Translations under genes and position numbers: made by a program
Part shown: positions 1,680 to 64,000 of the stretch, one piece after another
Layout of the letters: each line of letters starts with the position of its first letter
How positions within the stretch are numbered: the first letter of the stretch is position 1
Assembly: GCA_964234715.1 (NCBI GenBank)
Contig: OZ174281.1
Source: Podarcis melisellensis
Taxonomy: Eukaryota
Reading direction: 5' to 3' (one strand)
DNA: 64,000 bases
Notes under the pieces: model-generated
What the model was told of the DNA's origin: nothing
The model's input: only the letters and a program-made list of their open reading frames with translations
The model's database searches: none

Positions 1680-4039
1680 GTATGTGGAATCATAGCGTGT
1701 TATTCAAAATGACAAATATATTTTTATTTGTGTAACATGCTTCATAGATAGCATGCTTTTCCAGAGGCAGGCAGAGCCACTTGCAAACAATGATATGACC
1801 TACCAGGATGACAGCTTGGTTGTCTTGCGCAAAGCAATTATGGTGCAGTGTCTTAATGGAATTAGAACTTCCTTCCTTCCATTTTACTGTAGAGGAATCC
1901 ATGCTGAAATCAACCCACGCATGACATACTTGTCCTCTGAGTGGCCACCCATGATTCTACCTGGATAGACAGCTTGAGATGGAATGATCCATACTTCACA
2001 GACTGACAATGTGGGTACACAGTGAGGTATTCTGATGACTGGCTTAGCATATGCAAAGAATTGACTTCAACCCACACTCTAACATGTGGTTGGAGTGAAT
2101 CATTGTTTAATCAAACCTTTCTCATACAAAAACACTAAATGCAAACCAATTTATCCTTCAATTTCTAAACAGTAATTTGAAGCATTAATTTGTAAATTAA
2201 TTTATCATGAAGTAGGCCTTTCACAATAGCCACTATTTTTATCTACTCTAAATTGAATCTTTGTGATTTTTAGATTCCTCATATAGTGGGCCAGTACATA
2301 CAGAGCTGGAAATTGAGGCATTTAGATGAGGAACCAGGCTATGGGAGAGTCATTGAACTCTATATGGTTCATGTGACTTGGTGCTATAGTGCATCTACTG
2401 GACATACATTGCCTAGAGAGCGCTGTTTCTTTACAACCCATATTTCCCACCAAAGCATTATCAATGGAACAGAAGTTTGTTTGAAGTAATTTGCCCTTGA
2501 CAGATCTCAAGCTTTTTCAGATATCACAATTTTCTTTTAAGTATATGCAAATAGATCATTTTGTGACTTGTCCTAGTAACGAACCAAGCATGTGTGAAGT
2601 TTTTACTTAGAATTCTAAGTGTATTTTCTTTAGTTTTAATAGCTGTAACATGCTAAATTTGCATTAGAAATATTCAGAGGCCAGAAGTTTAGTTCACTTT
2701 GGCTTATCTCACATTCTACAACCATCCAAAACTAGGAATGGGGCTCTTTTCTCAGACATCAGGGCAGGTTCGTATACTCATGACTACAACACTAAGCAAC
2801 TAAAGGACTTAATGATTTATCACAGGTCTGACATAAGAGATGGGACTTTGATAGCAGGCAGCAGCATCTCAAACACATACATTCCACTGCTAATAAACAA
2901 GTGATGAGAAATAAAGCCAGGACAATGCATGTCTGAATCAACCCTAAGAGTAAGACCAATTGGTCTAGATATTAAATCTATTTAAAATCAGATTCATACC
3001 TTGTGGATGTCGTGTGTCTCAACATACATACAACGGGGAAATTATTGCACCACTGGACATAGTGTATGGCTCAGGGGGAGGCAGAGCAATCTACATGGCA
3101 GGTTTCCCAAAAAAGTGGCCTGGTTTACTGTTGTAGCTAAGAAAAGGAAGTGATCTTCTAAAAAATTCAGTGGAATGTGGCACACTGTAAAGTGTACAGT
3201 TTGTAAAGTTGTCTGATACATGTGCTGAGCAGGTATGAGCAGTTTGCCACATACTCTGACATTAGCTTGGATACAACATTATTCAAGCTAACCTACCGCA
3301 CCTGACCAGAGTTGTCGAGCTCCAGGAGGGCATGGGGGAAAGTACGCCCCACTGCTCACCAGAGGTTGAGGTCCAGTCTTTGGGGGCTATGCCTTGTCAT
3401 GTCTCTTGCCACAGGTGGGGTTTGGCCCACCCAAGGTTGATGTTCAGATTAGCTGCCCACACGTATAATTTCCACAGCAGATGTTATTAATCACATGTGA
3501 CCTTAGTAGGTGTCTTAGTGTCTCCTCTCTTTATTCTTGCATCCAGTTACACTAAGTTTCTTGCAGCCAGGCAATGCATCCCTCTCAAAGCTGAAATGCT
3601 TTCAGATGAGAACATGGCTAGCTGCCACTGTCAGAACGACTCCAAGGAAGTCAGGAGTTTCCTGGGTTCAACAGAGTTACTTTGGCAGCTGACACTGTAC
3701 TTCTCAGATGGCCTTCTCCATGGAGACATTTTTTTTAGATCACTGAAGCAGCCTCTACTTGCTGTGGCTAGAATGATCCACTGAAACGGGTTGGTTTTTT
3801 CCTCCTTCAGTGAAGTTACTCTGGAAGCAGCCACCATGGTTCAGAAAATCCTGCCCCCCTGTTGAACTCTCTATTGACCATATTAATGGAGGTTGTCAGG
3901 TCCAGAACCAATCATCCAATTAGGCTTGGAGGCTTTTTCGTCTTCCTCAATATGCAAATTATAGATAATCAAATGCAGTGTTCATTTTTTTTAAAAAAAA
4001 TCTCTCTTCCACATACCACAGAATAAGTTCCCTAGTCTG

Positions 4040-4340
4040 GTTCACCTCTCTAATCAGCCTCTAATCAGCTTGTTAAAATCAGCCATTTTGAAATCAAATA
4101 CCCTAGTTGCATCCCTTGTCCCAACAGCCCATTCAATTAAATTCATCAGGACTAACTCATGATCGCTTGGTCCAAGGTTATTCCCAACAGCCATTTTATC
4201 TATCATATCCTCACTCCTTGCCAGCACCAAATCCAACATAGCATTTCCTTTTTCCTCAGAAGATTGATTCGCTCCTCATGCATGCAGAGAATGATGACCT
4301 TCTTAACTGGAATCTCTGTAATAGCCATTTCACCTTGATG
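4040..4340 (-). mobile_element. Degraded CR1-clade LINE fragment (end of APE endonuclease domain)
   Basis: Translation LDLVL...VGNNLGPSDHELV...FDFKMADFNKL carries the LDLVL, LGxSDH and DFxKADF motifs of CR1 ORF2; it is interrupted. Confidence 0.75.
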
Positions 4341-5058
4341 CAGACATGATATGCACCACACAAATCTCCTTGGTTGAGAAAAAGATAAAATGTAATTGAA
4401 AAAGGCCCTTTGGAGTGTGGAAAAGGCAGGCCTGGGTACGGGCTGCCAGACCATGGGCCATATCTGGCCATCTTCATAAGACATTCTTCTACTGCATGTT
4501 CTTTTATTTATGCAATCTAGTATCTGCTTCCTACACTAGCCCCTTCTTATATGTGTCTTTGCCATTTAAGGGCAGAATCACAACAAAAGTGGAAAAAAAC
4601 ATTTTGGTGTGATTTTTCTCACCTGCCAGCATGATTCTTGAGAAACAGAAGCATAAGTGTATAGAAAGTAATAAAAGCAAAGGTCTGCTTTTAGCATAAA
4701 CTGTACAAACTATTTTCTTCCCAGGCTGACATTTTATAGTGCCACTCCTGACTTGGCATGAAACCCTTGGTGATGTCATGGCAAAACATTAGTCTGCATT
4801 GAAAAACCAGGCCTTGGGCCCTCAGTAGAACAGTCACATGATAGCTATCTGTCCAAACTCAGCCCAGTTTCAGGGATGGGTGAATTGAGGAATCATTGTA
4901 TATCTTCTTCATAAATTTTAATAGTACAAAAGGTTAAGGTGATTGTTTTCGTTGTTTATTTTTAGCAACAGTTCCATGTGCTTGATTTCATAATAAAGCT
5001 TTGATTTCTTAATTAAATGTGTTCTTATTAGTTTTGGTTGTTTCTCTGTTCTGAACAG

Positions 5059-15602: not shown

Positions 15603-15967
15603 GAGGGATGTGGGTGGCGCTGTGGTCTAAACCACTGAGCCTAGGGCTTGCCCGATTGGAAGGTCGGCGGTACAAATCCCCGCGACGGGGTGAGCTCCCG
15701 TTGCTCGGTCCCTGCTCCTGCCAACCTAGCAGTTCGAAAGCACATCAAAGTGCAAGTAGATAAATAGGTACTGCTCCAGCAGGAAGGTATACGGCGTTTC
15801 CATGCGCTTCTCTGGTTTCACCAGAAGCGGCTTAGTCATGCTGGCCACATGACCCGGAAAAACTGTCTGCGGACAAACGCCGGCTCCCTTGGCCAGTAAA
15901 GCGAGATGAGCGCCGCAACCCCAGAGTCATTCTCGACTGGACTTAACTGTCAGGGGTCCTTTACCTT
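15603..15967 (+). mobile_element. Full-length Sauria (Squam1) SINE
   Basis: tRNA-like head gggatgtgggtggcgctgtggtctaaacc, diagnostic body ctgccaacctagcagttcgaaagcac...gtcatgctggccacatgacccgg, and (acctt)n-type tail. 12-bp TSD tacattttatat at 15591-15602 and 15968-15979. Confidence 0.95.
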
Positions 15968-16699
15968 TACATTTTATATCCCACCAGTTTTTCACCATGG
16001 GAATTCAAGGTGGTCTACATATGGTTTCCAGTTGGTGTCCCATTCAGGCACTGACCATACTCAGACCTACTGCATCACAGTAGCTAAAACCTATGTCCTA
16101 GGACTAGAGAGCAGATGCATTGCATTCTAGTTTAATCTATAAGACAACATATCAAAGGAGAATAAGGACAGAAGATGTAGTAAAAGATTAACTTTGTTGA
16201 ATCTTGGCATGGAGATCCATTCTCCTCTGACAACAGTATACCTATCCATTCAGATCATAGATTATGTAAATTTCTGCAATATACTGAAGTAGTGGAGCTC
16301 ACTAGCAAGTGCTGAAAACAGAAGAAAACAGTAGGTTAAGTGCTGTGCTTTTATTTTCTCCTTTTTTATTCTGTCAGTGTTTTTATTGCTAGGATTGCTT
16401 AATGTGAGCATTATGTCTTGCATCAATTGTGACGAGGGGCAAGTGGCACTTCCACATAATTGTGCTTGTATGATAATCCTTTTCATGTTTTTTTTTAAAA
16501 AAATGGAGGTGAATGTTGAATGGAAATTGATTAATCAATGGGGTTTCCAATAATAAGGAATAAAGTAGCATTCCAATCTTTTTGATGTCTTGTTTTTTAA
16601 AAATAAAAAAAGAATATGGCTTCTGTTTTAAGAAGGGACATAAAAAGCTGCTGTTTACCAGATCAGACTGTTATTTATATTGTCTGGCAGGGGCTCTCC

Positions 16700-16960: not shown

Positions 16961-16963
<3 letters not shown>

Positions 16964-17257
16964 CAGTACAGCCATCTTCTCAGAAAAACTCTTCACAAAG
17001 TTCAAGAGGTCAAGACACAAAGACTTTAGCAACTAATCCACACCTAATGACCCACCTAAGTGGTACTCAGGATATCACTCAAGAAATCACTCAAGATATC
17101 CCTCAGGTAATTAAGGAACAAAAGAAGAAAAGGCACACTAGCCTGGGAACTTCCTCTCTGCCCAGAACATTGGAGGCTATACACCACACCCCCTCAACAG
17201 TATTTATAGGAACTCAAACACTGAGATCCTGCTCTGTTCCAGTAACAAGAAGCCGAA

Positions 17258-17310
17258 AGCACCAGCCTGAAGATGACGAGTGAGACCTCGTCGAAACGTC
17301 GCCTAGACAC
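17258..17310 (+). ncRNA. Minimal type I hammerhead ribozyme motif in pLTR copy 1
   Basis: CUGAAGA-U-[GACGAG/ugagac/CUCGUC]-GAAA-CGUC: core boxes, a perfect 6-bp stem II and a palindromic minimal stem III (ACGU). Predicted cleavage after C17300. Stem I is weak. Confidence 0.75.
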
Positions 17311-17351
17311 CCCAACTTTTACACGGGAAGACACCCGAGGACACCAAAACC

Positions 17352-17400
<49 letters not shown>

Positions 17401-17472
17401 TTTCGTAGATTTTCACGGGTGCAGGAATGCAGGTTTTGGTGTCCTCGGGTGTCTTCCCGTGTAAAAGTTGGG

Positions 17473-17525
17473 GTGTCTAGGCGACGTTTCGACGAGGTCT
17501 CACTCGTCATCTTCAGGCTGGTGCT
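17473..17525 (-). ncRNA. Hammerhead ribozyme motif, copy 2
   Basis: Exact reverse complement of the copy 1 motif. Confidence 0.75.
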
Positions 17526-18686
17526 TTCGGCTTCTTGTTACTGGAACAGAGCAGGATCTCAGTGTTTGAGTTCCTATAAATACTGTTGAGGGGGTGTGGT
17601 GTATAGCCTCCAATGTTCTGGGCAGAGAGGAAGTTCCCAGGCTAGTGTGCCTTTTCTTCTTTTGTTCCTTAATTACTTGAGGGATATCTTGAGTGATTTC
17701 TTGAGTGATATCCTGAGTACCACTTAGGTGGGTCATTAGGTGTGGATTAGTTGCTAAAGTCTTTGTGTCTTGACCTCTTGAACTTTGTGAAGAGTTTTTC
17801 TGAGAAGATGGCTGTACTGCACTTAGTTGTGCTCTGGCTTGGCTTCGTGTATAGGGGCGAGCTGTGGTTTTGTGGCCTGTGTCAGCCAGATCTGTGTAGG
17901 GATTGCAGGGGGGTGCAGCATCCGGAGGTGCCACCATGGTTTGGCTACTGGATGGTGTCTGTAATTTATCTGTGGAGAGGGTCTGGGTTTGGGTCTGGTG
18001 TGGTTGATTGGTGATAGCGTTCTGTGTGCCTCTGGATCTGGTGTCAGTTTTTGTGGGGAGGGCTAATTTCCAGATGTCTGGCAAGCGGGATGTGTCGTCA
18101 CGCTTGTTCATGTTGTGAGGGTGTTTCTCTATCTCGATGGCTTCCATGATTATTCTCTTGTGGTGATGTTCCATGTTAAAGAGCAATTTGGAATCTGCAA
18201 AATTAATTTCGTGTCCTGTTTCTTTCATGTGTTGGAAAAGAGAGGAAGTTTTTTTCTTCTTTTTTGACGGCATTCTTGTGTTCTGCGATACGTGCATTTA
18301 TTCGTCTGTTTGTTTGTCCAATGTACGTGGCTGGGCAGACTTTGCAGGGTATTTCATAGACCCCTTGGTTTTCCAACTGGATTTTATCCTTGGGGTTTCT
18401 GAGGATATTGGCTATTTTTTTGGTTGGTGCAAAAGGCTGTTTTGATATTGTGTTTATGGAGGATTTTGCTAATTTTATCTGTAGTGCCCTTGATATAAGG
18501 AAGGAGGGCCATGCCATTGTTTTCTTCTGTGTCTTGGTTTTTGGGGGGTGTTTCTTTTTGGATTAGCTTCGTAACCCTGTTTTGCTGGTATCCATTGGCA
18601 ATTAACACATTTGAGAGATTCTGTAACTCAGTTGTCAAGTGGTCTTTGTCACCCAGGCGTTTGGTTCTGGAGATGAGAGTCTTGGC
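17500..18686 (-). pseudogene. Truncated Penelope ORF: thumb/linker + GIY-YIG endonuclease + Thr/Gln/Pro-rich C-terminal extension, with two frameshifts
   Basis: Pieces lie in three frames (ORF track 18384-18740, 18203-18517, 17500-18297), joined at homopolymer runs near 18415-18421 and 18248-18265. No RT core is present. Confidence 0.88.
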
Positions 18687-19222
18687 TCTCCCCACAAAAA
18701 CTGACACCAGATCCAGAGGCACACAGAACGCCATCACCAATCAACCACACCAGACCCAAACCCAGACCCTCTCCACAGATAAATTACAGACACCATCCAG
18801 TAGCCAAACCATGGTGGCACCTCCGGATGCTGCACCCCCCTGCAATCCCTACACAGATCTGGCTGACACAGGCCACAAAACCACAGCTCGCCCCTATACA
18901 CGAAGCCAAGCCAGAGCACAACTAAGTGCAGTACAGCCATCTTCTCAGAAAAACTCTTCACAAAGTTCAAGAGGTCAAGACACAAAGACTTTAGCAACTA
19001 ATCCACACCTAATGACCCACCTAAGTGGTACTCAGGATATCACTCAAGAAATCACTCAAGATATCCCTCAAGTAATTAAGGAACAAAAGAAGAAAAGGCA
19101 CACTAGCCTGGGAACTTCCTCTCTGCCCAGAACATTGGAGGCTATACACCACACCCCCTCAACAGTATTTATAGGAACTCAAACACTGAGATCCTGCTCT
19201 GTTCCAGTAACAAGAAGCCGAA

Positions 19223-19275
19223 AGCACCAGCCTGAAGATGACGAGTGAGACCTCGTCGAAACGTCGCCTAGACAC
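19223..19275 (+). ncRNA. Hammerhead ribozyme motif, copy 3
   Basis: Identical motif; core at 19232-19265. Confidence 0.75.
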
Positions 19276-19347
19276 CCCAACTTTTACACGGGAAGACACC
19301 CGAGGACACCAAAACCTGCATTCCTGTACCCGTGAAAATCTACGAAA

Positions 19348-19382
<35 letters not shown>

Positions 19383-19689
19383 AGCTGAATATAAGAGAAA
19401 TAGACCCGCAGCACCAACTCTCCAACAGATCTTGTTCCCCAATTAGGTTTCTAAGGCCCCTTTGCCCACCCACTGAGCCATAGCTTTGGATTTAGCACAG
19501 AGAACAAGCTAAGTATCTGTGTTTTCTCAGCAGAAGAGAGGATTAGCCCAGCTCTGTTGTTTCCTGATATCACCTCCAGCCAATGTGGTGGGGTGTGGGG
19601 AAGCCTGCCCAGTTTAGCTCTCATCTGAAAGCATCTCCAGCTGGTAGTTTCTCCAGCAGCCAGTCACCTATATGCTTTAGTCTCGCCAA

Positions 19690-22431
19690 AGACTCTCCTC
19701 CCTGAAAGAGAGGGGAGTGGTTGTGGACGGGAGTCCGAGCACCGCTCCTAGCAGGGGGCGTTGCCCCCTGCCTCCAGCTCACCTGGCTGGCACTCACGCC
19801 CCCCCCCGGTGGCCATCCAACCAGGTGCCATGGGGGGGCGTGTCCAGCAGCCTTTATGCTGCAGTGCCAGCCTCCCCGCGGCCTCATTTCTCTTTGTCGT
19901 TGGATTAGCATCAACTGGTGATGAACCCCTGGTGAATAAACCCACTTGTTTCGCGATCCAATGCCTAAGCCAATACCTTTTCATTGCTGTAATCAATAAA
20001 GTTGTGGCCTTTTCTAGCCCATTAACCTTATATCACGTGTCCCTGTGTCTTCATTTTACTTCGCGGGGGTCGGGTCCTCGAACCACAAAGACTCTCCTCC
20101 CTGAAAGAGAGGGGAGTGGTTGTGGACGGGAGCCCGAGCACCGCTCCTAGCAGGGGGCGTTGCCCCCTGCCTCCAGCTCACCTGGCTGGCACTCACGCCC
20201 CCCCCCGGTGGCCATCCAACCAGGTGCCATGGGGGGGCGTGTCCAGCAGCCTTTATGCTGCAGTGCCAGCCTCCCCCCGGCCTCATTTCTCTTTGTCGTT
20301 GGATTAGCATCAACTGGTGATGAACCCCTGGTGAATAAACCCACTTGTTTCGCGATCCAATGCCTAAGCCAATACCTTTTCATTGCTGTAATCAATAAAG
20401 TTGTGGCCTTTTCTAGCCCATTAACCTTATATCACGTGTCCCTGTGTCTTCATTTTACTTCGCGGGGGTCGGGTCCTCGAACCACAAAGACTCTCCTCCC
20501 TGAAAGAGAGGGGAGTGGTTGTGGACGGGAGCCCGAGCACCGCTCCTAGCAGGGGGCGTTGCCCCCTGCCTCCAGCTCACCTGGCTGGCACTCACGCCCC
20601 CCCCCGGTGGCCATCCAACCAGGTGCCATGGGGGGGCGTGTCCAGCAGCCTTTATGCTGCAGTGCCAGCCTCCCCCCCGGCCTCATTTCTCTTTGTCGTC
20701 CTGGGCGAGTCACCCACCCTCCACTCCCTTTGAGTTAGGGCTTAGGTCATTGGCCTTGCTATGGACCTTAGGTTGGTCGCCCCGGTTGCCCGGGGGGCCT
20801 GGTAGGAGTTTTTCCATTTGGCATTAGGCTTTTTGGTTTTTTCGCCTACCTCGTAGCAATCGTCACAACTTTTTGGTGGTATTGGTGGGTAGGTTAGGCA
20901 TTGGAATAATCTGTTGTGGTGTGTTGAAGTGCTAGGTGTGGCCATCGCCTATGCCTTCAATTTCTAGGGGTATTCCGTTAATGGAATCTGGCGGTCGTGT
21001 ATTCCGTCCGAAGCCTGCTTGGCGGGAGGCCATGGCACAACCCTCGGTGACATCAGGGGTGAGCCTATAGTTGGATTAGCATCAACTGGTGATGAACCCC
21101 TGGTGAATAAACCCACTTGTTTCGCGATCCAATGCCTAAGCCAATACCTTTTCATTGCTGTAATCAATAAAGTTGTGGCCTTTTCTAGCCCATTAACCTT
21201 ATATCACGTGTCCCTGTGTCTTCATTTTACTTCGCGGGGGTCGGGTCCTCGAACCACAAAGACTCTCCTCCCTGAAAGAGAGGGGAGTGGTTGTGGACGG
21301 GAGCCCGAGCACCGCTCCTAGCAGGGGGCGTTGCCCCCTGCCTCCAGCTCACCTGGCTGGCACTCACGCCCCCCCCCGGTGGCCATCCAACCAGGTGCCA
21401 TGGGGGGGCGTGTCCAGCAGCCTTTATGCTGCAGTGCCAGCCTCCCCCCGGCCTCATTTCTCTTTGTCGTTGGATTAGCATCAACTGGTGATGAACCCCT
21501 GGTGAATAAACCCACTTGTTTCGCGATCCAATGCCTAAGCCAATACCTTTTCATTGCTGTAATCAATAAAGTTGTGGCCTTTTCTAGCCCATTAACCTTA
21601 TATCACGTGTCCCTGTGTCTTCATTTTACTTCGCGGGGGTCGGGTACTCGAACCACAAAGACTCTCCTCCCTGAAAGAGAGGGGAGTGGTTGTGGACGGG
21701 AGCCCGAGCACCGCTCCTAGCAGGGGGCGTTGCCCCCTGCCTCCAGCTCACCTGGCTGGCACTCACGCCCCCCCCCCGGTGGCCATCCAACCAGGTGCCA
21801 TGGGGGGGCGTGTCCAGCAGCCTTTATGCTGCAGTGCCAGCCTCCCCCCCGGCCTCATTTCTCTTTGTCGTCCTGGGCGAGTCACCCACCCTCCACTCCC
21901 TTTGAGTTAGGGCTTAGGTCATTGGCCTTGCTATGGACCTTAGGTTGGTCGCCCCGGTTGCCCGGGGGGCCTGGTAGGAGTTTTTCCATTTGGCATTAGG
22001 CTTTTTGGTTTTTTCGCCTACCTCGTAGCAATCGTCACAACTTTTTGGTGGTATTGGTGGGTAGGTTAGGCATTGGAATAATCTGTTGTGGTGTGTTGAA
22101 GTGCTAGGTGTGGCCATCGCCTATGCCTTCAATTTCTAGGGGTATTCCGTTAATGGAATCTGGCGGTCGTGTATTCCGTCCGAAGCCTGCTTGGCGGGAG
22201 GCCATGGCACAACCCTCGGTGACATCAGGGGTGAGCCTATAGTTGGATTAGCATCAACTGGTGATGAACCCCTGGTGAATAAACCCACTTGTTTCGCGAT
22301 CCAATGCCTAAGCCAATACCTTTTCATTGCTGTAATCAATAAAGTTGTGGCCTTTTCTAGCCCATTAACCTTATATCACGTGTCCCTGTGTCTTCATTTT
22401 ACTTCGCGGGGGTTGGGTCCTCGAACCACAA
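19690..22431 (+). mobile_element. Non-autonomous Ngaro-type (DIRS-order, tyrosine recombinase) retroelement array A-B-A-B-A-C-B-A-B-A-C-B
   Basis: A (~211 bp): 19690, 20089, 20488, 21260, 21659. B (~188 bp): 19901, 20300, 21072, 21471, 22244. C (372 bp): 20700, 21872. The array contains the split-direct-repeat order A-C-B-A-B (20488-21658). There is no long TSD, only a shared CAA at both ends, and no coding capacity. Confidence 0.8.
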
Positions 22432-23254
22432 GAAATCATTAGCAGATCTGGCTGTAGCTATGGACTTAAGAAAGAGACTCGTTTGACCACTTAATGGCCT
22501 CACTTTCAACAAAATCCCATATTACAAATATAAAACCACAGACTTGGAGGGGACCCAAAGATAACATCCAAAACAACCAACCACTCTCCCCCACCAGTTG
22601 TAAAGTGGTAGGAAATCCTTTTTGCTTAATAGAACAACATGACCTATGTCAATATATACAGATCATTCTGTACTAATACAAAAATATGTTGAATAATGCC
22701 TGCAGTATGAAAACTAGGCATGCCATTTCCAGTTAAGTTCCATAATAGCACCGAGGGTGGCAGGCAACATGGGAAGATCTCCAAGAGCTGTGTGGCTTGG
22801 ATGGTTTGAACAACCACAACTTACCTCCCATTCTTACACAGGAGGAGCATAATTATTTTCAAAGAGTAAATGCGTAAAATGATGAGGAGCCATTGCTCTA
22901 GCACTGTTATAAGATGCTAACTGGTGATGTATTTAATCCCAGAGATGCTTGACATTCAAAGAGTGAGTGATGTACGGCAGAGCATTTGTATGGGCCATCT
23001 GGAGATGTACACCAAACTCCACACTTGATGAGGAACTGAAACTTCTGATTCCAAGACCTAAATATGCATCAATCCCCGCTCTGGTTTTAATTGATTCCTA
23101 ACAAGAAGAATTTTGGCAAACCGCAACATGCTTTTGTGTGAAATGCCTCTGTTGTTACAATATCATAAATTGTTTTTAATCATTTGCACATATTATCGTG
23201 TGATGGCAACCACAGATCTGTTGAAATGAATATAAGATTCTGATTAGGGGAAAA

Positions 23255-31400: not shown

Positions 31401-32544
31401 CTATTTGATAATCTGTTTGATAATGTGATGTGTTTTCATATGGGGCAATTTAATTATCTGTGAGTAGAACAGGGACCTCTGCTCTCTAGTTTAACCTGGG
31501 TTGGTACAAATCCTTTTTGCCAGGATGTAAGTAATTGCACACAACCCACCTAAGCAAGAGAGTGGAGATTTCAGGTCACTAAATAGTTTGACCTTGGACT
31601 AATCACATACCAATAACCTGTGAAAGGTGTTTCTTTTAAAATAAAATAAAATCCTGTATTAAAAAATTGATATCCCACTTTGGTTTCCCAAAGCAAATCC
31701 ATACTATCTAGCAATAAATAAACACTCATAAAAACATACTGTTACATGCCACCCCAATCTCTACAAATGGTGCAAGATTTTGGGGGTTGAAGGTGCACTT
31801 CCCATGATCTGTGGTCTTTTGGGACAATGAGGCATAGTGAAGATGGTAGTGTCTTTATGTTATATGCTTTTATTTACTCATATATACAACCTGCACCTAG
31901 ATGGACAGATTGCAGAGCATTCACAGCCTATGAGGTTCTGGCTCCCCCCAGCATTGGATTCAAAGGACAGCAAAAACCCATTCTCTATGTCTCTCAGCCT
32001 GTCATCCCCAGCTCACCCCCACCTTCTCATGATCATGATCATGGAGTGAGACAGTATCATATTGAGTGCTGGAACAAAGTCATCCCAATAAGAATGGCAA
32101 CTATCCTGAATTTCCAAACGTCATATTAATATATACACATGGGTTTCATGATTCGAAACAGAGCAGCATACCTTGCCGTGGTCATTGGTGGTGAGTACTT
32201 CTTTGCCTAGTACAACAGCATGTATGTTGTTTGTACTGTAATGTGAGAAGTTTAGCATCTGTTTTTGAATGTTATGGGTCACAAGAATTTGCAGGTGCAA
32301 CAAGAATGGATGGTGACTTGCACAAGCTGCTCAGTTGTTTGACAGCAGGGCCTGGCATGGTGGGGTCATGGTAGAGCAGTTCTAGGGTAAAGTATGACAA
32401 AAACCTTTACAAATAATAATATTCCACCCTCCTAGTCTGCCAGACTTTTATCTGGTCAGATTCCTATGTATTTGAGGGAAGACAATACCTGCATTTAAGT
32501 GTGGTTCTACTAAATACTGTGAGATTTCATGGCTCAATAGTAGA

Positions 32545-33110
32545 ACACATTGTTGTTGGACTCCAGCTCCCATCAGCTTCAGCCAGTATGGCCAAGACTC
32601 AGGGATAATGGGCACTGTGGTCCAGCAACATCTGGAGACTGTCTGTGGATGAGGGTGGAGATTCTGTTCCTTCGGGCTGCGCCACTTTTTCCCCTATACC
32701 ATTCTAATTCCCACCCTCTCCCTCACACACACTGCGGCGACGCCTCCTCCCTCCCTTCTCCTGGCTTCTCCCCGCCCTGCCTAGAGGAGGAAGGGGGCTG
32801 GGCTGAGCTGGCTGAGTGCCATTTTAAGCAGCCCCTCTTTGGAGCCAGCCCTTTTGTGCCACTCATCTTCTCTCCACCGCCACCGTCCTGGTTCTCCTGT
32901 GGGCCAGAGAGCAGTGGCGGTGGTGGTGGCAACAGCCCCAGGGAAGGTAAGCACAGCAACTGGGGCTGGGGGTGGGGGGTAGGGAGGAGGACTACTTGCC
33001 CCCCTTGCCTCTTCTTCCAGCTTCCCCCCTCCCAGTGCCAATTCTCCGACCTGCCACAAGGTCTGAGGGACAGTGGACCAGCCAGCGGCCAAAAATTTTT
33101 ACCGACCCTG
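32545..33110. mobile_element. Palindromic MITE (32545-32640) abutting a GC-rich hAT-like fragment ending in a TIR at 33110
   Basis: MITE core ggactccagctcccatcagc...cagcaacatctggag. The right end aaaaatttttaccgaccctg is a CAGGG-type hAT terminus on the minus strand. Confidence 0.5.
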
Positions 33111-41906: not shown

Positions 41907-42042
41907 CAGCCTCTCCCAACCTGATGCCCTTCAGATGTTTTGCACTGCAACTTCCATCAGCCCCAGCCACCATGGGCAATGGCCAGGAATTATTGGAGCC
42001 ACAGTCCAACAATATCTGGACAGCAGTTTGTGGGAGATTTTC
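41907..42042. mobile_element. Palindromic hAT-type MITE
   Basis: cccaacctgatgcccttcagatgtttt...ccagccccagcc...caatatctgga...gggag; same family core. Confidence 0.6.
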
Positions 42043-44181: not shown

Positions 44182-44527
44182 GTAAAGGGAAAAGTAAAGG
44201 GATCCCTGACCATTAGGTCCAGTCATGACCAACTCTGGAGTTGCGGCGCTCATTTCACTTTATTGGCCAAGGGAGCCAGTGTACAGCTTCCGGGTCATGT
44301 GGCCAGCATGACTAAGCCGCTTCTGGCGAACCAGAGCAGCACACGGAAACGCTGTTTATTTTCCTGCCGGAGCGGTACCTATTTATCTACTTGCACTTTG
44401 ATGTGCTTTCGAACTGCTAGGTTGGCAGGAGCAGGGACAGAGCAACAGGAGCTCAACACATTGCGGGGATTCAAACCGCCAACCTTCTGATCGGCAAGCC
44501 CTAGTCTCTGTGGTTTAACCTACAGTG
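44182..44527 (-). mobile_element. Sauria (Squam1) SINE, slightly 5'-truncated
   Basis: Reverse-complement match to the copy at 15603-15967 along its length. Confidence 0.92.
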
Positions 44528-56114: not shown

Positions 56115-56242
56115 CCAGCATCTCTATCCCTTCAGATGTTTTGGACTGCAACTGTCATCAGCCTCAGCAAGCATGACCAGTAGTCAAGGATGATGGGAAT
56201 TGTATTCCAAAACATTTGGACACCATCAGGTTGGGGAAAGCT
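56115..56242. mobile_element. Palindromic hAT-type MITE
   Basis: cagatgttttggactgcaactgtcatca...tgatgggaattgtattccaaaacatttg inverted arms. Confidence 0.65.
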
Positions 56243-61213: not shown

Positions 61214-63281
61214 ATTGTTTGCTTGTTTGTTTGCTTGTTTGTTTTTATTAACTTTTCAATTTTACATCTCAAAATAGACAGCTTACATAATACCATACAT
61301 TCAATGGCTTCCCTCCTTCCCTTTCCATGGATCATTTAATTTATCTACCATTACTGCATATTGTACTATAACCATTTTATTCAGTTCTTCTAACTTACAT
61401 CACTCAAGTGTTTATTATACTGTTGAATTTACCTTAATGCTGCCAGCATTTTCAACTGTGCACAATTATTTTCTATATACTCAGCAAAAGTTTTCCACTC
61501 TTCTTTAAATACATGTTCTTCTTGCTCTCTTATTCTATACGTTAGACCAGCTAGTTCCGCATATTCTATCATCTTAAATTGCCAGTCCTCCTTACCTGGG
61601 ACCTCCCTCACTTTCCATTTTTGGGCTACCAAAACTCAGGACATCGTTATTGCATACATAAATAAGTTTTTCTGGCACCTGGGAACTTCTGTCTGAACTA
61701 TTCCTAACAAAAATGCCTCTGGTCTTTTTGGGAAAGTTGGTTTTTTTAAAAAAAATTATCTCATGATAAATCATTTCCCAATATTCTTTAAGCTTTTTAC
61801 AGATTAAAAAGTTCAATTCATTTATTTACATTTTCAACACAAATCTGATTCTACTTTATACATCTTAGCCAGTCTACTCGGGCTAAAATATCATCTATGA
61901 ATTATTTTCATGTAGCATGTGTGTAGTATGCAGTAAATTTCAAGTCATTCTTCCAAAGTTTCTCCCAAAGGTAAACCTATGTTATGTTTTATGTCCTTTG
62001 CCCAGTGTGTCATTGAAGCTTTAGCCAGCTCATCCTTTGTTTCCCATTCCAATAATAATTTATACATTTTAGACAGTAAAACTGTGAGCTTTGGTCTGAA
62101 ACCCCATTTTTCTTATCTAATTTAAACGTATCATGTAACTGGTGATACTGTAACCAATTCCTAACTTCCATTGGTTTCAGTCTGGGTTCACTCCCTGAAA
62201 GGTCCAGCAAGTCTCTATAGGTCGCCCACTGTCGATCCATATTAATTCTCTTAATTGTGGTTGCTTCAGTAGAGGATAGCCATAGAGGTGTTTTACTTTC
62301 CAGCAAATGTTTGTATTTCTTCCAGACTCTATACAAATTTCTCCTAATAATGTGGTTCATAAAACTCATAAATTTTATCTTTCCCATACCAAAGACATGC
62401 ATCCCAACCAAATTTTATGTTGTGGCCTTCCAGATCTAAAATGTGTGCATTTTCCAATACAATCCATTCCTTTAGCCAGCACAGACAAGCTGCCTCATAG
62501 TACAATTGCAGGTCTGGCAGGACAAAGCCTCCTCTTTCTTTTGTATCTATCCAAATGTTATGTTTAATTCCAGACTTTTTCCCCTGCCAGACAAATTTAG
62601 AGATATCTTGTTTCCATTCTTTGAGGCAACTTAAATTATTAACCATTGGGATTGATTGGAATAAAAGCAACATCTTAGGAAGCACATTCATTTTAATGGC
62701 TGAAATTCTACCTAGTAGAGAAAGCTTCATCCTTCCCCATATTGCCAGCTTTTTAAAAATATCTTTCCACAGTTGAATATAATTACCTTGAAATAAACTG
62801 AGATTTCTCACTGTCAGCCAAATCACCAAGTATTTAACTTTCTTACCTATTTTTAAGCCATTCACCATTTCTAAAGCCTTTTTCAACTGCTCATGTTTTT
62901 AACCAACATTTTGGTATTTTCTGTGTTTATTTTAAAACCTGCCACTTCTCCAAAGTTTTTATTTTTTTCTGGTTCCTTGGGGAGACTTACAATAGGTTGT
63001 TCCAAAGTTAACACCACATCATTCGCAAATGCTTTCATTCGACTTAATGCTATCTGCAGTTCCTACGTTGATATGGGTGCATTTAAAGTTCTCAAGTTTT
63101 CTTTAGATGCTTTAGGTATGTTGCAGTCTTTAAATAAGATTCCATTTTCTCAAGATCTTCCTTCTCACACTGATAAAATGCTGTATAAAATTTTACCAAT
63201 GCTTTCCTTATCTCTTTCGGGCTTGTCAAATGTTTCTCCTCATCAAAAATATTATTTATTATCTTATTTTTCCTTTCTTTT
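61214..63281 (-). mobile_element. 5'-truncated, internally deleted L1-clade LINE
   Basis: ORF2 remnants (AFANDVVL; KYL; LSLLGRISAIKMNVLPK; ERGGFVLPDLQLYYEAA) and an (AAAC)n-like tail at 61214-61245. 18-bp TSD ttcatgagtag[g/a]agtttg at 61196-61213 / 63282-63299. Confidence 0.9.
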
Positions 63282-63339
63282 TTCATGAGTAGAAGTTTGG
63301 TGGGGAAGCATTCTGCAATGGCAGTGAGACCAAAAAGGT

Positions 63340-64000
63340 CATGTGTGTTGAGTGAAGACATCCCCACTCCTTCTCTGATGTGAACTACACTGTGAGAATG
63401 CAACTTGAAATGCAACCTTGCTCCATTTGAAGCCTCTAATGTGAACATTGCCTGGCACCGAAAAACTAACAACATTAGTGCCATGCTTGTTTCGCTGGGG
63501 TGAAAATTCCAAAAACTGGGAACCACCACTGAAAAAGCTTGTTCCCTCATTGCCACCCTCCACACCTTCCTTGGAAGAGGCACACTGGGAAGGGCCCATT
63601 AGATTATTGAAGGGTCTTATGAAAAGGTTCATAAGGAGAGAGGCTGTTGTTGCCATATTGGGTCCTGAGGCCTACAATAGCTCAAAACCAGCACCTTGAA
63701 TTTAGCCTGGAAATGAGTTGGTAGCCATTTGGACCAGAATCATTGTTATGTGGTACCAGTCAGCAATCAGGCCACTGAATTCTATACTAGGTGCAGTTTC
63801 CAAACCACCTTGAAAGGCAGCCCTACATGTGCTGCACTGTAGTAATCTAACCTAGACGTGACTTGAGCATGAACGATAGAAGCTAGGTTATCCCCATCCA
63901 AATTGGATTGCAGCTGGACCATTCCATGCCACAGAGACCACTTGTGCTTCCAGTGTCTGTAGTGGAGCCAGACCAGAACCCCATCTAGAACAGGTCCATG
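63340..64000 (-). mobile_element. L2 LINE 3' portion, running off the window
   Basis: REQAFSVVVPSFWN motif and an upstream SRLDY...VGLPFKVVWKL remnant. Confidence 0.75.

What the first reader, a model, noticed from the sequence alone, without database searches (positions are those of the whole stretch)
19690..22431. Cassette-like array of a non-autonomous Ngaro element: AB-AB-ACB-AB-ACB
Canonical Ngaro is A-internal-B-A-B. Here five units (399, 399, 772, 399, 773 bp) are joined precisely at the same B|A junction, and the array starts with AB and ends with ACB (a permuted order). The circular intermediate has two equivalent B|A junctions, so a trans-acting tyrosine recombinase could integrate via either one, stack new circles into a resident junction, or excise 399-bp AB minicircles. 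That would be an integron-like array in a vertebrate. Private variants (A1 gagtcc and cccgcgg; B4 gtactcg; B5 ggttggg) argue for real copies.
Basis: partly seen in the sequence, partly recalled or inferred. Interest (0 to 1): 0.8.

Follow-up and report, generated by a model that had tools for sequence, protein, structure and literature searches.

The report
Tandem array of lizard non-coding transposon
A 2.7-kb run of five near-identical copies of a high-copy, non-coding mobile element in a wall-lizard genome is real, but ordinary local duplication explains it and nothing supports an integron-like cassette system.

Summary
Positions 19689-22431 carry five head-to-tail units, AB-AB-ACB-AB-ACB (399, 399, 772, 399, 774 bp), which differ by only 4 substitutions and 2 C-run lengths.

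The element belongs to a very abundant family. In three related lizard genomes, thousands of contigs match A, C and B, and other loci use the same A start and B end.

The array begins and ends with CAA, and each internal junction has a single CAA. This is the same-trinucleotide, no-duplication signature described for tyrosine-recombinase (DIRS-order) retrotransposons. A non-autonomous Ngaro-like element, comparable to SIRE of VIPER, is therefore plausible. I could not fetch an autonomous partner, so membership is untested.

The integron-like reading is not supported:
- The units are clonal. C1 and C2 are identical and share variants seen in 0-2% of the family's contig depth.
- The A|B joint was not among the best-supported joints in four other runs.
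- Two unequal crossovers from an A-B-A-C-B progenitor reproduce the exact order and fit the variant pattern.

Right-flank contigs of three other genomes stop matching at the array edge and then run on. This suggests the insertion is young and specific to this lineage. Earlier first-reader notes of this scan flagged similar CAA-bounded elements with 5' hairpins elsewhere in this genome.

The parts
19687..19689 (+). Left CAA trinucleotide, shared between the flank and the element junction (putative crossover core)
   Evidence: the left junction, all four internal B|A junctions and the right junction share exactly CAA
19689..20087 (+). Unit 1 = A1 (19689-19900) + B1 (19901-20087), 399 bp; two private substitutions in A1 (19734 T, 19878 G)
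20088..20486 (+). Unit 2 = A2 (20088-20299) + B2 (20300-20486), 399 bp, matches the consensus
20487..21258 (+). Unit 3 = A3 (20487-20699) + C1 (20700-21071) + B3 (21072-21258), 772 bp; A3 has the longer C run, shared with A5
21259..21657 (+). Unit 4 = A4 (21259-21470) + B4 (21471-21657), 399 bp; private A at 21646
   Evidence: one search shows C at 21646 in all contigs of four runs
21658..22431 (+). Unit 5 = A5 (21658-21871) + C2 (21872-22243) + B5 (22244-22431), 774 bp; private T at 22414 and one extra C in a run
22429..22431 (+). Right CAA trinucleotide at the array's end
   Evidence: right-flank contigs of X1, X4 and X11 stop matching at 22430
20072..20134 (+). Imperfect palindrome or hairpin spanning the B|A junction (the same at every junction); B-end CCACAA pairs with A TTGTGG around an inner 9-bp stem at the A start
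   Evidence: -17.2 kcal/mol as DNA, z = -3.35, 2 of 200 shuffles fold as well
22278..22343 (+). Two AATAAA motifs in B (22278 and 22338, repeated in every B), followed by a TATAT at 22372
   Evidence: motif scan only; use as signals not shown
22011..22044 (+). Block of C that stays alike across diverged family members; complementary to the B block 22341-22359
   Evidence: loose ends at 22011 (before) and 22044 (behind), and a depth peak; inverted repeat I6; long-range C:B stem, z = -4.75

Best explanation
The array is a real, young, locally amplified cluster of one non-coding mobile element. The element's basic unit is A-C-B, about 772 bp.

The family has on the order of thousands of copies in wall-lizard genomes and has fixed ends at the A start and the B end. 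It inserts without a target duplication, at a trinucleotide (CAA) that it shares with its own head-to-tail junction. This is how tyrosine-recombinase (DIRS-order, Ngaro-type) retroelements are thought to integrate: a circular form recombines with the genome at a matching 3-bp site.

The unit most likely corresponds to the A2-spacer-B2 end module of an autonomous lizard Ngaro and is moved in trans, as SIRE relates to VIPER.

At this locus the progenitor was A-B-A-C-B. That is either an internally deleted Ngaro, or a dimer in which one unit lost C through a 372-bp deletion with GT microhomology. Two rounds of unequal homologous exchange or slippage then followed:
1. AB was duplicated.
2. The 1172-bp AB+ACB block was duplicated.
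These steps give AB-AB-ACB-AB-ACB.

Shown: the anatomy, the clonality of the units, the CAA ends, the same ends at other loci, and the high copy number. Inferred: the absence of the array at this locus in three other genomes, recombinase involvement, an RNA intermediate, the partner element, and the order of events.
For: Anatomy and near-identity.

Unequal-crossover path: A3 and A5 share a C-run length that A2 and A4 lack. U2U3 and U4U5 differ by 2 substitutions in 1173 columns, while U1 and U2 differ by 2 in 399. This fits an older AB duplication followed by a younger block duplication. A breadth-first search of unequal crossovers reaches the observed order in 2 steps from ABACB, and never from ACBAB, ACB, ACBACB or AB.

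Clonality:
- Both C copies carry 22083 C (0% of contig depth in four runs), 22154 T (0-12%) and 22211 A (about 1% or less).
- All five A copies carry 21696 A (8-17% in the three DNA runs).

Family size and ends:
- 2157-4423 contigs per DNA run match at 90% or better.
- Summed word depth reaches 10^5-10^6, against 14-78 for the single-copy flank.
- Contigs from other loci begin to match at 21656-21659 and stop at 22431-22432, with hundreds of unlike letters beyond.
- One contig of a fourth species bridges B into A.

Recombinase signature: CAA at both ends and once per junction. The same-trinucleotide rule and 3-bp recombination without target duplication are described for DIRS-order elements in PMC3266345.

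Non-coding: no Pfam, Rfam or tRNA match and no protein relatives.

Youth: CpG observed/expected is 0.51 in the element against 0.11-0.24 in the flanks. Right-flank contigs of X1, X4 and X11 all stop matching at 22430 yet run on for 159-310 more letters.

Precedents: SIRE = A2 + spacer + B2 of VIPER, and TATE tandem clusters (PMC6681497); solo AB repeats of Ngaro (PMC8547959).
Against: - No YR/RT-encoding element sharing A or B could be fetched, so the link to Ngaro rests on architecture and on unchecked earlier notes.
- The claim that the array is absent elsewhere is inferred from where contigs stop matching. I did not see their sequence, and the match starts at 22430 where a simple empty site predicts 22429.
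- The A|B joint may be among the 11 joints the tool did not show.
- Contigs drop rare variants, so 'rare in the family' is a soft statement.
- A 3-bp overlap arises by chance in a few percent of insertions, and the wider junction-target similarity is not significant.
- Unequal crossover, multimer insertion and recombinase-mediated re-integration from the same source all predict precise junctions and clonal units.
Confidence: 0.5

Rival explanations
1. One-shot insertion of a multimer. A concatemeric cDNA, made by reverse-transcriptase template switching between the repeated A and B segments, or a multimeric circle, integrated once at CAA. The private differences arose afterwards.
For: The whole insert is an integer number of units bounded by CAA. 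The units are clonal. The array seems absent from three other genomes, so no intermediate array sizes are seen. Switching between A1/A2 and B1/B2 can generate any unit order (my inference from the published replication model).
Against: The divergence is graded: U1-U2 0.5% against U2U3-U4U5 0.17%. A3 and A5 share a C-run length. Both fit stepwise duplication better, though the numbers are tiny. No multimeric intermediates have been observed.
Confidence: 0.18
2. A trans-acting tyrosine recombinase integrated circles through either of two equivalent B|A junctions and stacked further circles, including AB minicircles, into resident junctions. The result is an integron-like cassette array.
For: A resident B|A junction is the best possible target for a site-specific recombinase. 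Tandem clusters are known for the YR element TATE. Each junction lies in a hairpin-forming palindrome. If C is the internal region, the AB-before-ACB order cannot arise from A-C-B-A-B by unequal crossover alone.
Against: All units share locus-specific or rare variants, although the family is highly heterogeneous. Independent captures from the pool are therefore unlikely, and re-integration into this one locus among thousands of junctions is improbable. The A|B joint needed for AB minicircles is not among the best-supported joints in four runs. Precise junctions do not discriminate between models. Two ordinary crossovers suffice.
Confidence: 0.12
3. Not a tyrosine-recombinase element at all. 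It would be another kind of repeat (an atypical LTR, a rolling-circle element or a dispersed satellite) that was tandemly duplicated.
For: No partner was found. Membership rests on architecture. AB can be read simply as ACB with a deletion, so the 'split direct repeat' pattern may be two tandem units.
Against: - The ends are not TG..CA, and there is no 4-6-bp target duplication.
- There are no terminal inverted repeats (self comparison).
- In any of the four phases allowed by the CAA ambiguity, the ends are not the TC..CTRR ends of Helitrons.
- There is no hammerhead or tRNA-like part.
- The precise head-to-tail junction, with one copy of the terminal trinucleotide, recurs in another species. 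A random segmental duplication would not produce that.
Confidence: 0.15
4. Assembly artefact: the assembler over-expanded a shorter repeat.
For: No read-level confirmation was possible. The two length differences lie in C homopolymers, which are error-prone. A complex 99-100% identical inverted and direct repeat lies just upstream.
Against: Four private substitutions lie outside homopolymers. The A3/A5 against A2/A4 pattern is coherent. A 2.7-kb array is easily spanned by modern long reads.
Confidence: 0.05

Closest known systems
SIRE, the non-autonomous derivative of the YR retrotransposon VIPER (Trypanosoma cruzi)
   Same: A short, non-coding, high-copy element that corresponds to A2 + a private spacer + B2 of an element with split direct repeats (PMC6681497). 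ACB has the same A-spacer-B layout.
   Different: The SIRE spacer is about 30 bp; here it is 372 bp. SIRE's partner is known; here it is not shown. The host is a vertebrate. This locus is a five-unit tandem array that includes a spacer-less variant.
Ngaro retrotransposons (A1-ORFs-B1-A2-B2) and their solo AB repeats
   Same: The A..B-A..B arrangement is present at this locus. Solo AB units are described for Cafeteria Ngaro elements (PMC8547959). Earlier notes of this scan report Ngaro elements with SGNH ORFs in this lizard genome.
   Different: There are no gag, RT/RH or YR genes here. The A|B joint seems private to this locus, and the family-wide form is A-C-B.
DIRS1-like elements: integration through a 3-bp circular junction
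   Same: The element, here the array, begins and ends with the same trinucleotide. There is one copy at the head-to-tail junction and no target duplication (PMC3266345; for example BfDIRS1 has TTG/TTG with junction CAA).
   Different: DIRS1-like elements have inverted terminal repeats plus an internal complementary region, not direct repeats.
TATE tandem clusters (Leishmania braziliensis) and tandem LTR-internal-LTR arrays made by unequal recombination
   Same: Head-to-tail clusters of an element with direct repeats (PMC6681497).
   Different: TATE is autonomous and telomere-associated. Here the units are non-coding and the array is a single interstitial locus.
Bacterial integron cassette arrays
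   Same: Only the picture of units joined at one recurrent recombination site.
   Different: There is no adjacent recombinase gene or attI-like site, no cassette diversity, and the units are clonal duplicates.

Membership tests
Ngaro (DIRS order) retrotransposon, non-autonomous derivative | Split direct repeats in the order A..B-A..B | tested here: inconclusive
   A-C-B-A-B and A-B-A-C-B both occur within the array. They can equally be read as tandem ACB units of which some lost C. The A|B joint is not among the best-supported joints in four other runs.
Ngaro (DIRS order) retrotransposon, non-autonomous derivative | Shares its terminal repeats with an element encoding gag, RT/RH and a tyrosine recombinase | not testable with these tools
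   No access to the rest of the lizard genome. There is no such ORF in the window. Sequence look-ups in the scan's notes were blank, which means nothing. Earlier notes say intact Ngaro elements exist in this genome, unchecked.
DIRS-order (tyrosine-recombinase) integration | Element begins and ends with the same trinucleotide, equal to the circle junction; no target site duplication | tested here: met
   CAA at 19687-19689 and 22429-22431, with a single CAA at each of four internal junctions. Matches at other loci start at 21656-21659 and end at 22431-22432. The rule is as described in PMC3266345. One locus was seen directly. A 3-bp overlap by chance is not negligible.
DIRS-order (tyrosine-recombinase) integration | A head-to-tail (circle) junction exists as a family feature | tested here: met
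   A 204-letter contig of run X15 (another species, possibly RNA) runs from B through the junction into A with 3 differences (record 17 and the 'goes back' joint).
LTR retrotransposon / solo LTR array | TG..CA ends and a 4-6-bp target site duplication | tested here: not met
   The ends read (C)AAAGACTC...GAACCACAA. The flanks share only CAA.
Helitron-type rolling-circle element (tandem arrays common) | 5' TC, 3' CTRR with a subterminal hairpin, insertion between A and T | tested here: not met
   None of the four possible phases, on either strand, gives these ends (read directly).
Retrozyme / Penelope-derived tandem repeat | Hammerhead ribozyme in the repeat | tested here: not met
   No Rfam match in 19689-22431 at E up to 1.
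Integron-like cassette array | Diverse, independently captured cassettes next to a recombinase and an attachment site | tested here: not met
   The units are clonal. There is no recombinase ORF in the window.

The most novel reading that the evidence does not exclude
The array was built by a tyrosine recombinase acting on resident B|A junctions, by re-integration of circles or junction-to-junction exchange. Tandem arrays would then be the self-sufficient form of this non-autonomous family, because only an array supplies the internal B|A junction that the replication model needs to restore the ends. That would make recombinase-driven array growth a propagation strategy in a vertebrate.
Probability: 0.12. 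Interest if true: 0.7.

Novelty: new member of a known kind. Interest (0 to 1): 0.3.

Why it matters
If the family is confirmed as a Ngaro-derived non-autonomous element, it would be a vertebrate counterpart of SIRE/VIPER. It would have thousands of copies, and this insertion appears lineage-specific, so the family may have moved recently. That makes it useful for studying how tyrosine-recombinase retroelements choose targets (the CAA core) and which RNA or DNA parts they need in cis. Candidates are the junction hairpin and the conserved, mutually complementary blocks in C and B. The array itself is an ordinary product of recombination between repeats and does not call for a new mechanism.

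Tried and rejected
- **Protein coding.** The ORFs across A, B and C have no Pfam family. The 129-aa AB ORF has no relatives in the word search.
- **RNA families and tRNA-like parts.** None in the array.
- **Other copies in the window.** None.
- **Fetching other loci or the empty site.** Look-ups of exact flank ORFs found nothing. Scans of metagenome and viral collections with conserved 20-22-mers also found nothing, so unit order elsewhere and the autonomous partner stay untested.
- **The scan's own notes, by sequence or relatives.**
- **Extended similarity between the B|A junction and the target.** Not significant; 90% of shuffles score as well. Only the 3-bp CAA stands.
- **ENE-like U-rich hairpin in C.** A local fold of 21960-22110 is no better than shuffles, z = -0.03.
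- **Read-level check of unit number.** Not possible. All runs are short-read contigs, and I laid only A5-C2-B5 plus the right flank, to avoid sending a long internal repeat.
- **LTR, Helitron, MITE, SINE and retrozyme readings.** Rejected on their ends and the missing hallmarks.

Full report
**1. The observation**

The sequence at 19689-22431 is as described. Exact anchors place:
- five A segments, at 19689, 20088, 20487, 21259 and 21658;
- five B segments, at 19901, 20300, 21072, 21471 and 22244;
- two C segments, at 20700 and 21872.

The units measure 399, 399, 772, 399 and 774 bp. TRF scores the 399-bp period at 2003 with 99% matches, and the repeat finder gives spacings of 399/772/399/773.

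Alignment of the copies shows only four substitutions, all private:
- A1: 19734 T and 19878 G;
- B4: 21646 A;
- B5: 22414 T.

There are also two C-run length differences. C1 and C2 are identical over 372 bp. A3 and A5, the two A copies that precede C, share the longer C run, while A1, A2 and A4 share the shorter one.

**2. What the element is not**

- None of the ORFs crossing A, B or C matches a Pfam family.
- The longest ORF, 129 aa, has no relatives in the word search.
- No Rfam family reaches E = 1 inside the array, and ARAGORN finds no tRNA-like part.
- The ends are not TG..CA.
- There are no terminal inverted repeats (self comparison).
- No phase allowed by the boundary ambiguity gives Helitron ends.

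**3. What the reads say**

To stay clear of the tool's bar on long internal repeats, I laid Logan contigs of four runs on 21600-22900. This stretch covers the B4 tail, A5, C2, B5 and 470 bases of right flank. Three runs are DNA from three species labels (X1, X4, X11). One run, X15, is possibly RNA from a fourth.

(a) The family is very abundant.
- 2989, 2157 and 4423 contigs of the three DNA runs match at 90% or better.
- Summed word depth reaches 10^5-10^6, against 69, 14 and 78 in the single-copy flank.
- The tool warns that this is not a copy number. It does show a family of the order of thousands of copies.
- C is as abundant as A and B.

(b) Other loci use the same ends.
- Contigs begin to match at 21656-21659 after hundreds of unlike letters (X1 record 2, X4 record 25).
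- Contigs stop matching at 22431-22432 before hundreds of unlike letters (X11 record 15).

(c) The head-to-tail junction is a family feature. A 204-letter X15 contig runs from B across the junction into A with three differences.

(d) The array seems absent elsewhere.
- The right-flank contigs of X1, X4 and X11 (2, 3 and 19 differences in 471 bases) all stop matching at 22430.
- They then continue for 280, 310 and 159 further letters that match none of A, C or B in the stretch I laid.
- A de Bruijn contig that entered B5 would carry about 30 letters of it and then break.
- These genomes therefore most likely lack the array at this site.
- X4's 310 extra letters equal the distance from 19688 back to the (AT)15/repeat boundary at 19379, where a contig would be expected to break.
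- This is inference, because I did not see the contig letters. A plain empty site would also predict a match from 22429, not 22430.

(e) The array's units carry variants that are rare or unseen elsewhere.
- 22083 C: 0% of contig depth in all four runs.
- 22154 T: 0-12%.
- 22211 A: about 1% or less.
- 21696 A: 8-17% in the three DNA runs.
- Both C copies and all five A copies share these letters, so the units are clonal.

(f) The exact A|B joint (21871 to 22244) is not among the 15 joints shown for any run. Several other joints from the end of A into late C or B are shown, each in single contigs. Eleven joints were not shown, so this is suggestive only.

**4. The ends**

The left flank, all four internal junctions and the right flank share exactly CAA. 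The insert is therefore an integer number of units with one extra CAA.

Piednoel et al. (PMC3266345) describe the following for DIRS1-like elements. Integration occurs by recombination between a 3-bp junction of the circular form and an identical genomic trinucleotide. There is no target duplication, and elements begin and end with the same trinucleotide. One of their elements has TTG/TTG with junction CAA.

The present element fits that rule. Wider similarity between junction and target is not significant.

The junction sits in an imperfect palindrome, with B-end CCACAA pairing with TTGTGG in A around an inner 9-bp stem. It folds at -17.2 kcal/mol as DNA, z = -3.35.

Two first-reader notes elsewhere in this genome describe similar things:
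- TSD-less elements bounded by a GCAA core with a 5' hairpin;
- a non-coding element whose ends form a nested hairpin only when circularised.

Both notes are unchecked, but they agree with what I see here.

**5. Identity**

The scan's earlier notes say this is a wall-lizard genome with intact Ngaro elements carrying an SGNH ORF. One followed-up note speaks of an A2-B2 spacer in lizard Ngaro elements. I could not reach those sequences, so the key membership test, a YR/RT-encoding partner sharing A and B, is not done.

Architecture, ends and non-coding nature make a non-autonomous DIRS-order (Ngaro-type) element the best reading. The closest published analogue is SIRE, which equals A2 + spacer + B2 of VIPER (PMC6681497). 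Solo AB repeats are known for Ngaro elements in Cafeteria (PMC8547959), and tandem clusters are known for TATE.

**6. How the array arose**

A breadth-first search over unequal crossovers between like segments reaches AB-AB-ACB-AB-ACB in two steps from A-B-A-C-B:
1. AB is duplicated.
2. The AB+ACB block is duplicated.

The search never reaches the observed order from A-C-B-A-B, ACB, ACB-ACB or AB.

The variant pattern fits this path:
- A3/A5 against A2/A4 share run lengths.
- U2U3 against U4U5 differ by 2 substitutions in 1173 columns, while U1 against U2 differ by 2 in 399.

If C is the A2-B2 spacer, AB-ACB is the canonical order of an internally deleted element. Alternatively, AB is ACB minus C. 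The deletion has a 2-nt GT microhomology, and the A|B joint seems private to this locus.

Independent capture of circles from a heterogeneous pool would not give clonal units. Re-integration into this one locus among thousands of junctions is improbable.

A single insertion of a multimer remains a serious rival. Recombinase-mediated stacking is not excluded, but nothing here calls for it.

**7. Age**

CpG observed/expected is 0.51 in the element, against 0.11 and 0.24 in the flanks. Four private substitutions in 2743 bp are of the same order as the 0.4% flank divergence from the closest run. Together with the probable empty site elsewhere, the insertion and its growth look recent and lineage-specific.

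**8. Verdict**

- The 'integron-like cassette array' part is not supported.
- This is a new member of known kinds of things: SIRE-like derivatives, solo or tandem repeats of YR retroelements, and arrays grown by unequal exchange.
- Interest is modest.

Noticed in passing
window 22011-22044 (C) and 22312-22371 (B); equivalents 20839-20872 and 21140-21199: The two blocks that stay alike across diverged family members include the segments complementary to each other (C 22026-22044 with B 22341-22359, which overlaps the second AATAAA). They are bounded by the main loose-end positions and marked by depth peaks. The whole ACB RNA folds with a long-range C:B stem, z = -4.75. This suggests a constrained long-range pairing, perhaps for reverse transcription or poly(A) control.
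   Followed up: partly
window 16962-19379: Just upstream lies a complex of 99-100% identical inverted and direct repeats: 698-nt arms 17369-18066 / 18682-19379, 395-nt arms 16962-17356 / 17427-17821, and a direct pair 1965 bp apart. It carries ORFs of 245-265 aa and ends in (AT)15. It looks like the partly inverted tandem form of a Penelope-like element, but that name rests on my memory and on other notes. Pfam found nothing. Rfam found no hammerhead at E up to 1, only spurious miRNA-model hits on the palindrome.
   Followed up: partly
window 22524-22567: A short stretch of the right flank has 3-6 times the single-copy contig depth in three runs, so it is part of some other low-copy repeat.
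   Followed up: no
window 62010-63583: ORFs on the minus strand look like fragments of a LINE (L1-type) reverse transcriptase by eye. Pfam gave no hit for the 180-aa piece at E up to 0.1.
   Followed up: no
window 41927-41997, 56128-56198, 32543-32613; 15652-15976 vs 44183-44494: Dispersed 62-87% similar repeats, probably copies of a lizard SINE or another interspersed repeat.
   Followed up: no
window 21872-22200 (5' two thirds of C): Single contigs in other genomes join the end of A (21872-21881) to 22155, 22192, 22201, 22394 or 22407. The family therefore includes several internal-deletion variants of C with different breakpoints.
   Followed up: no
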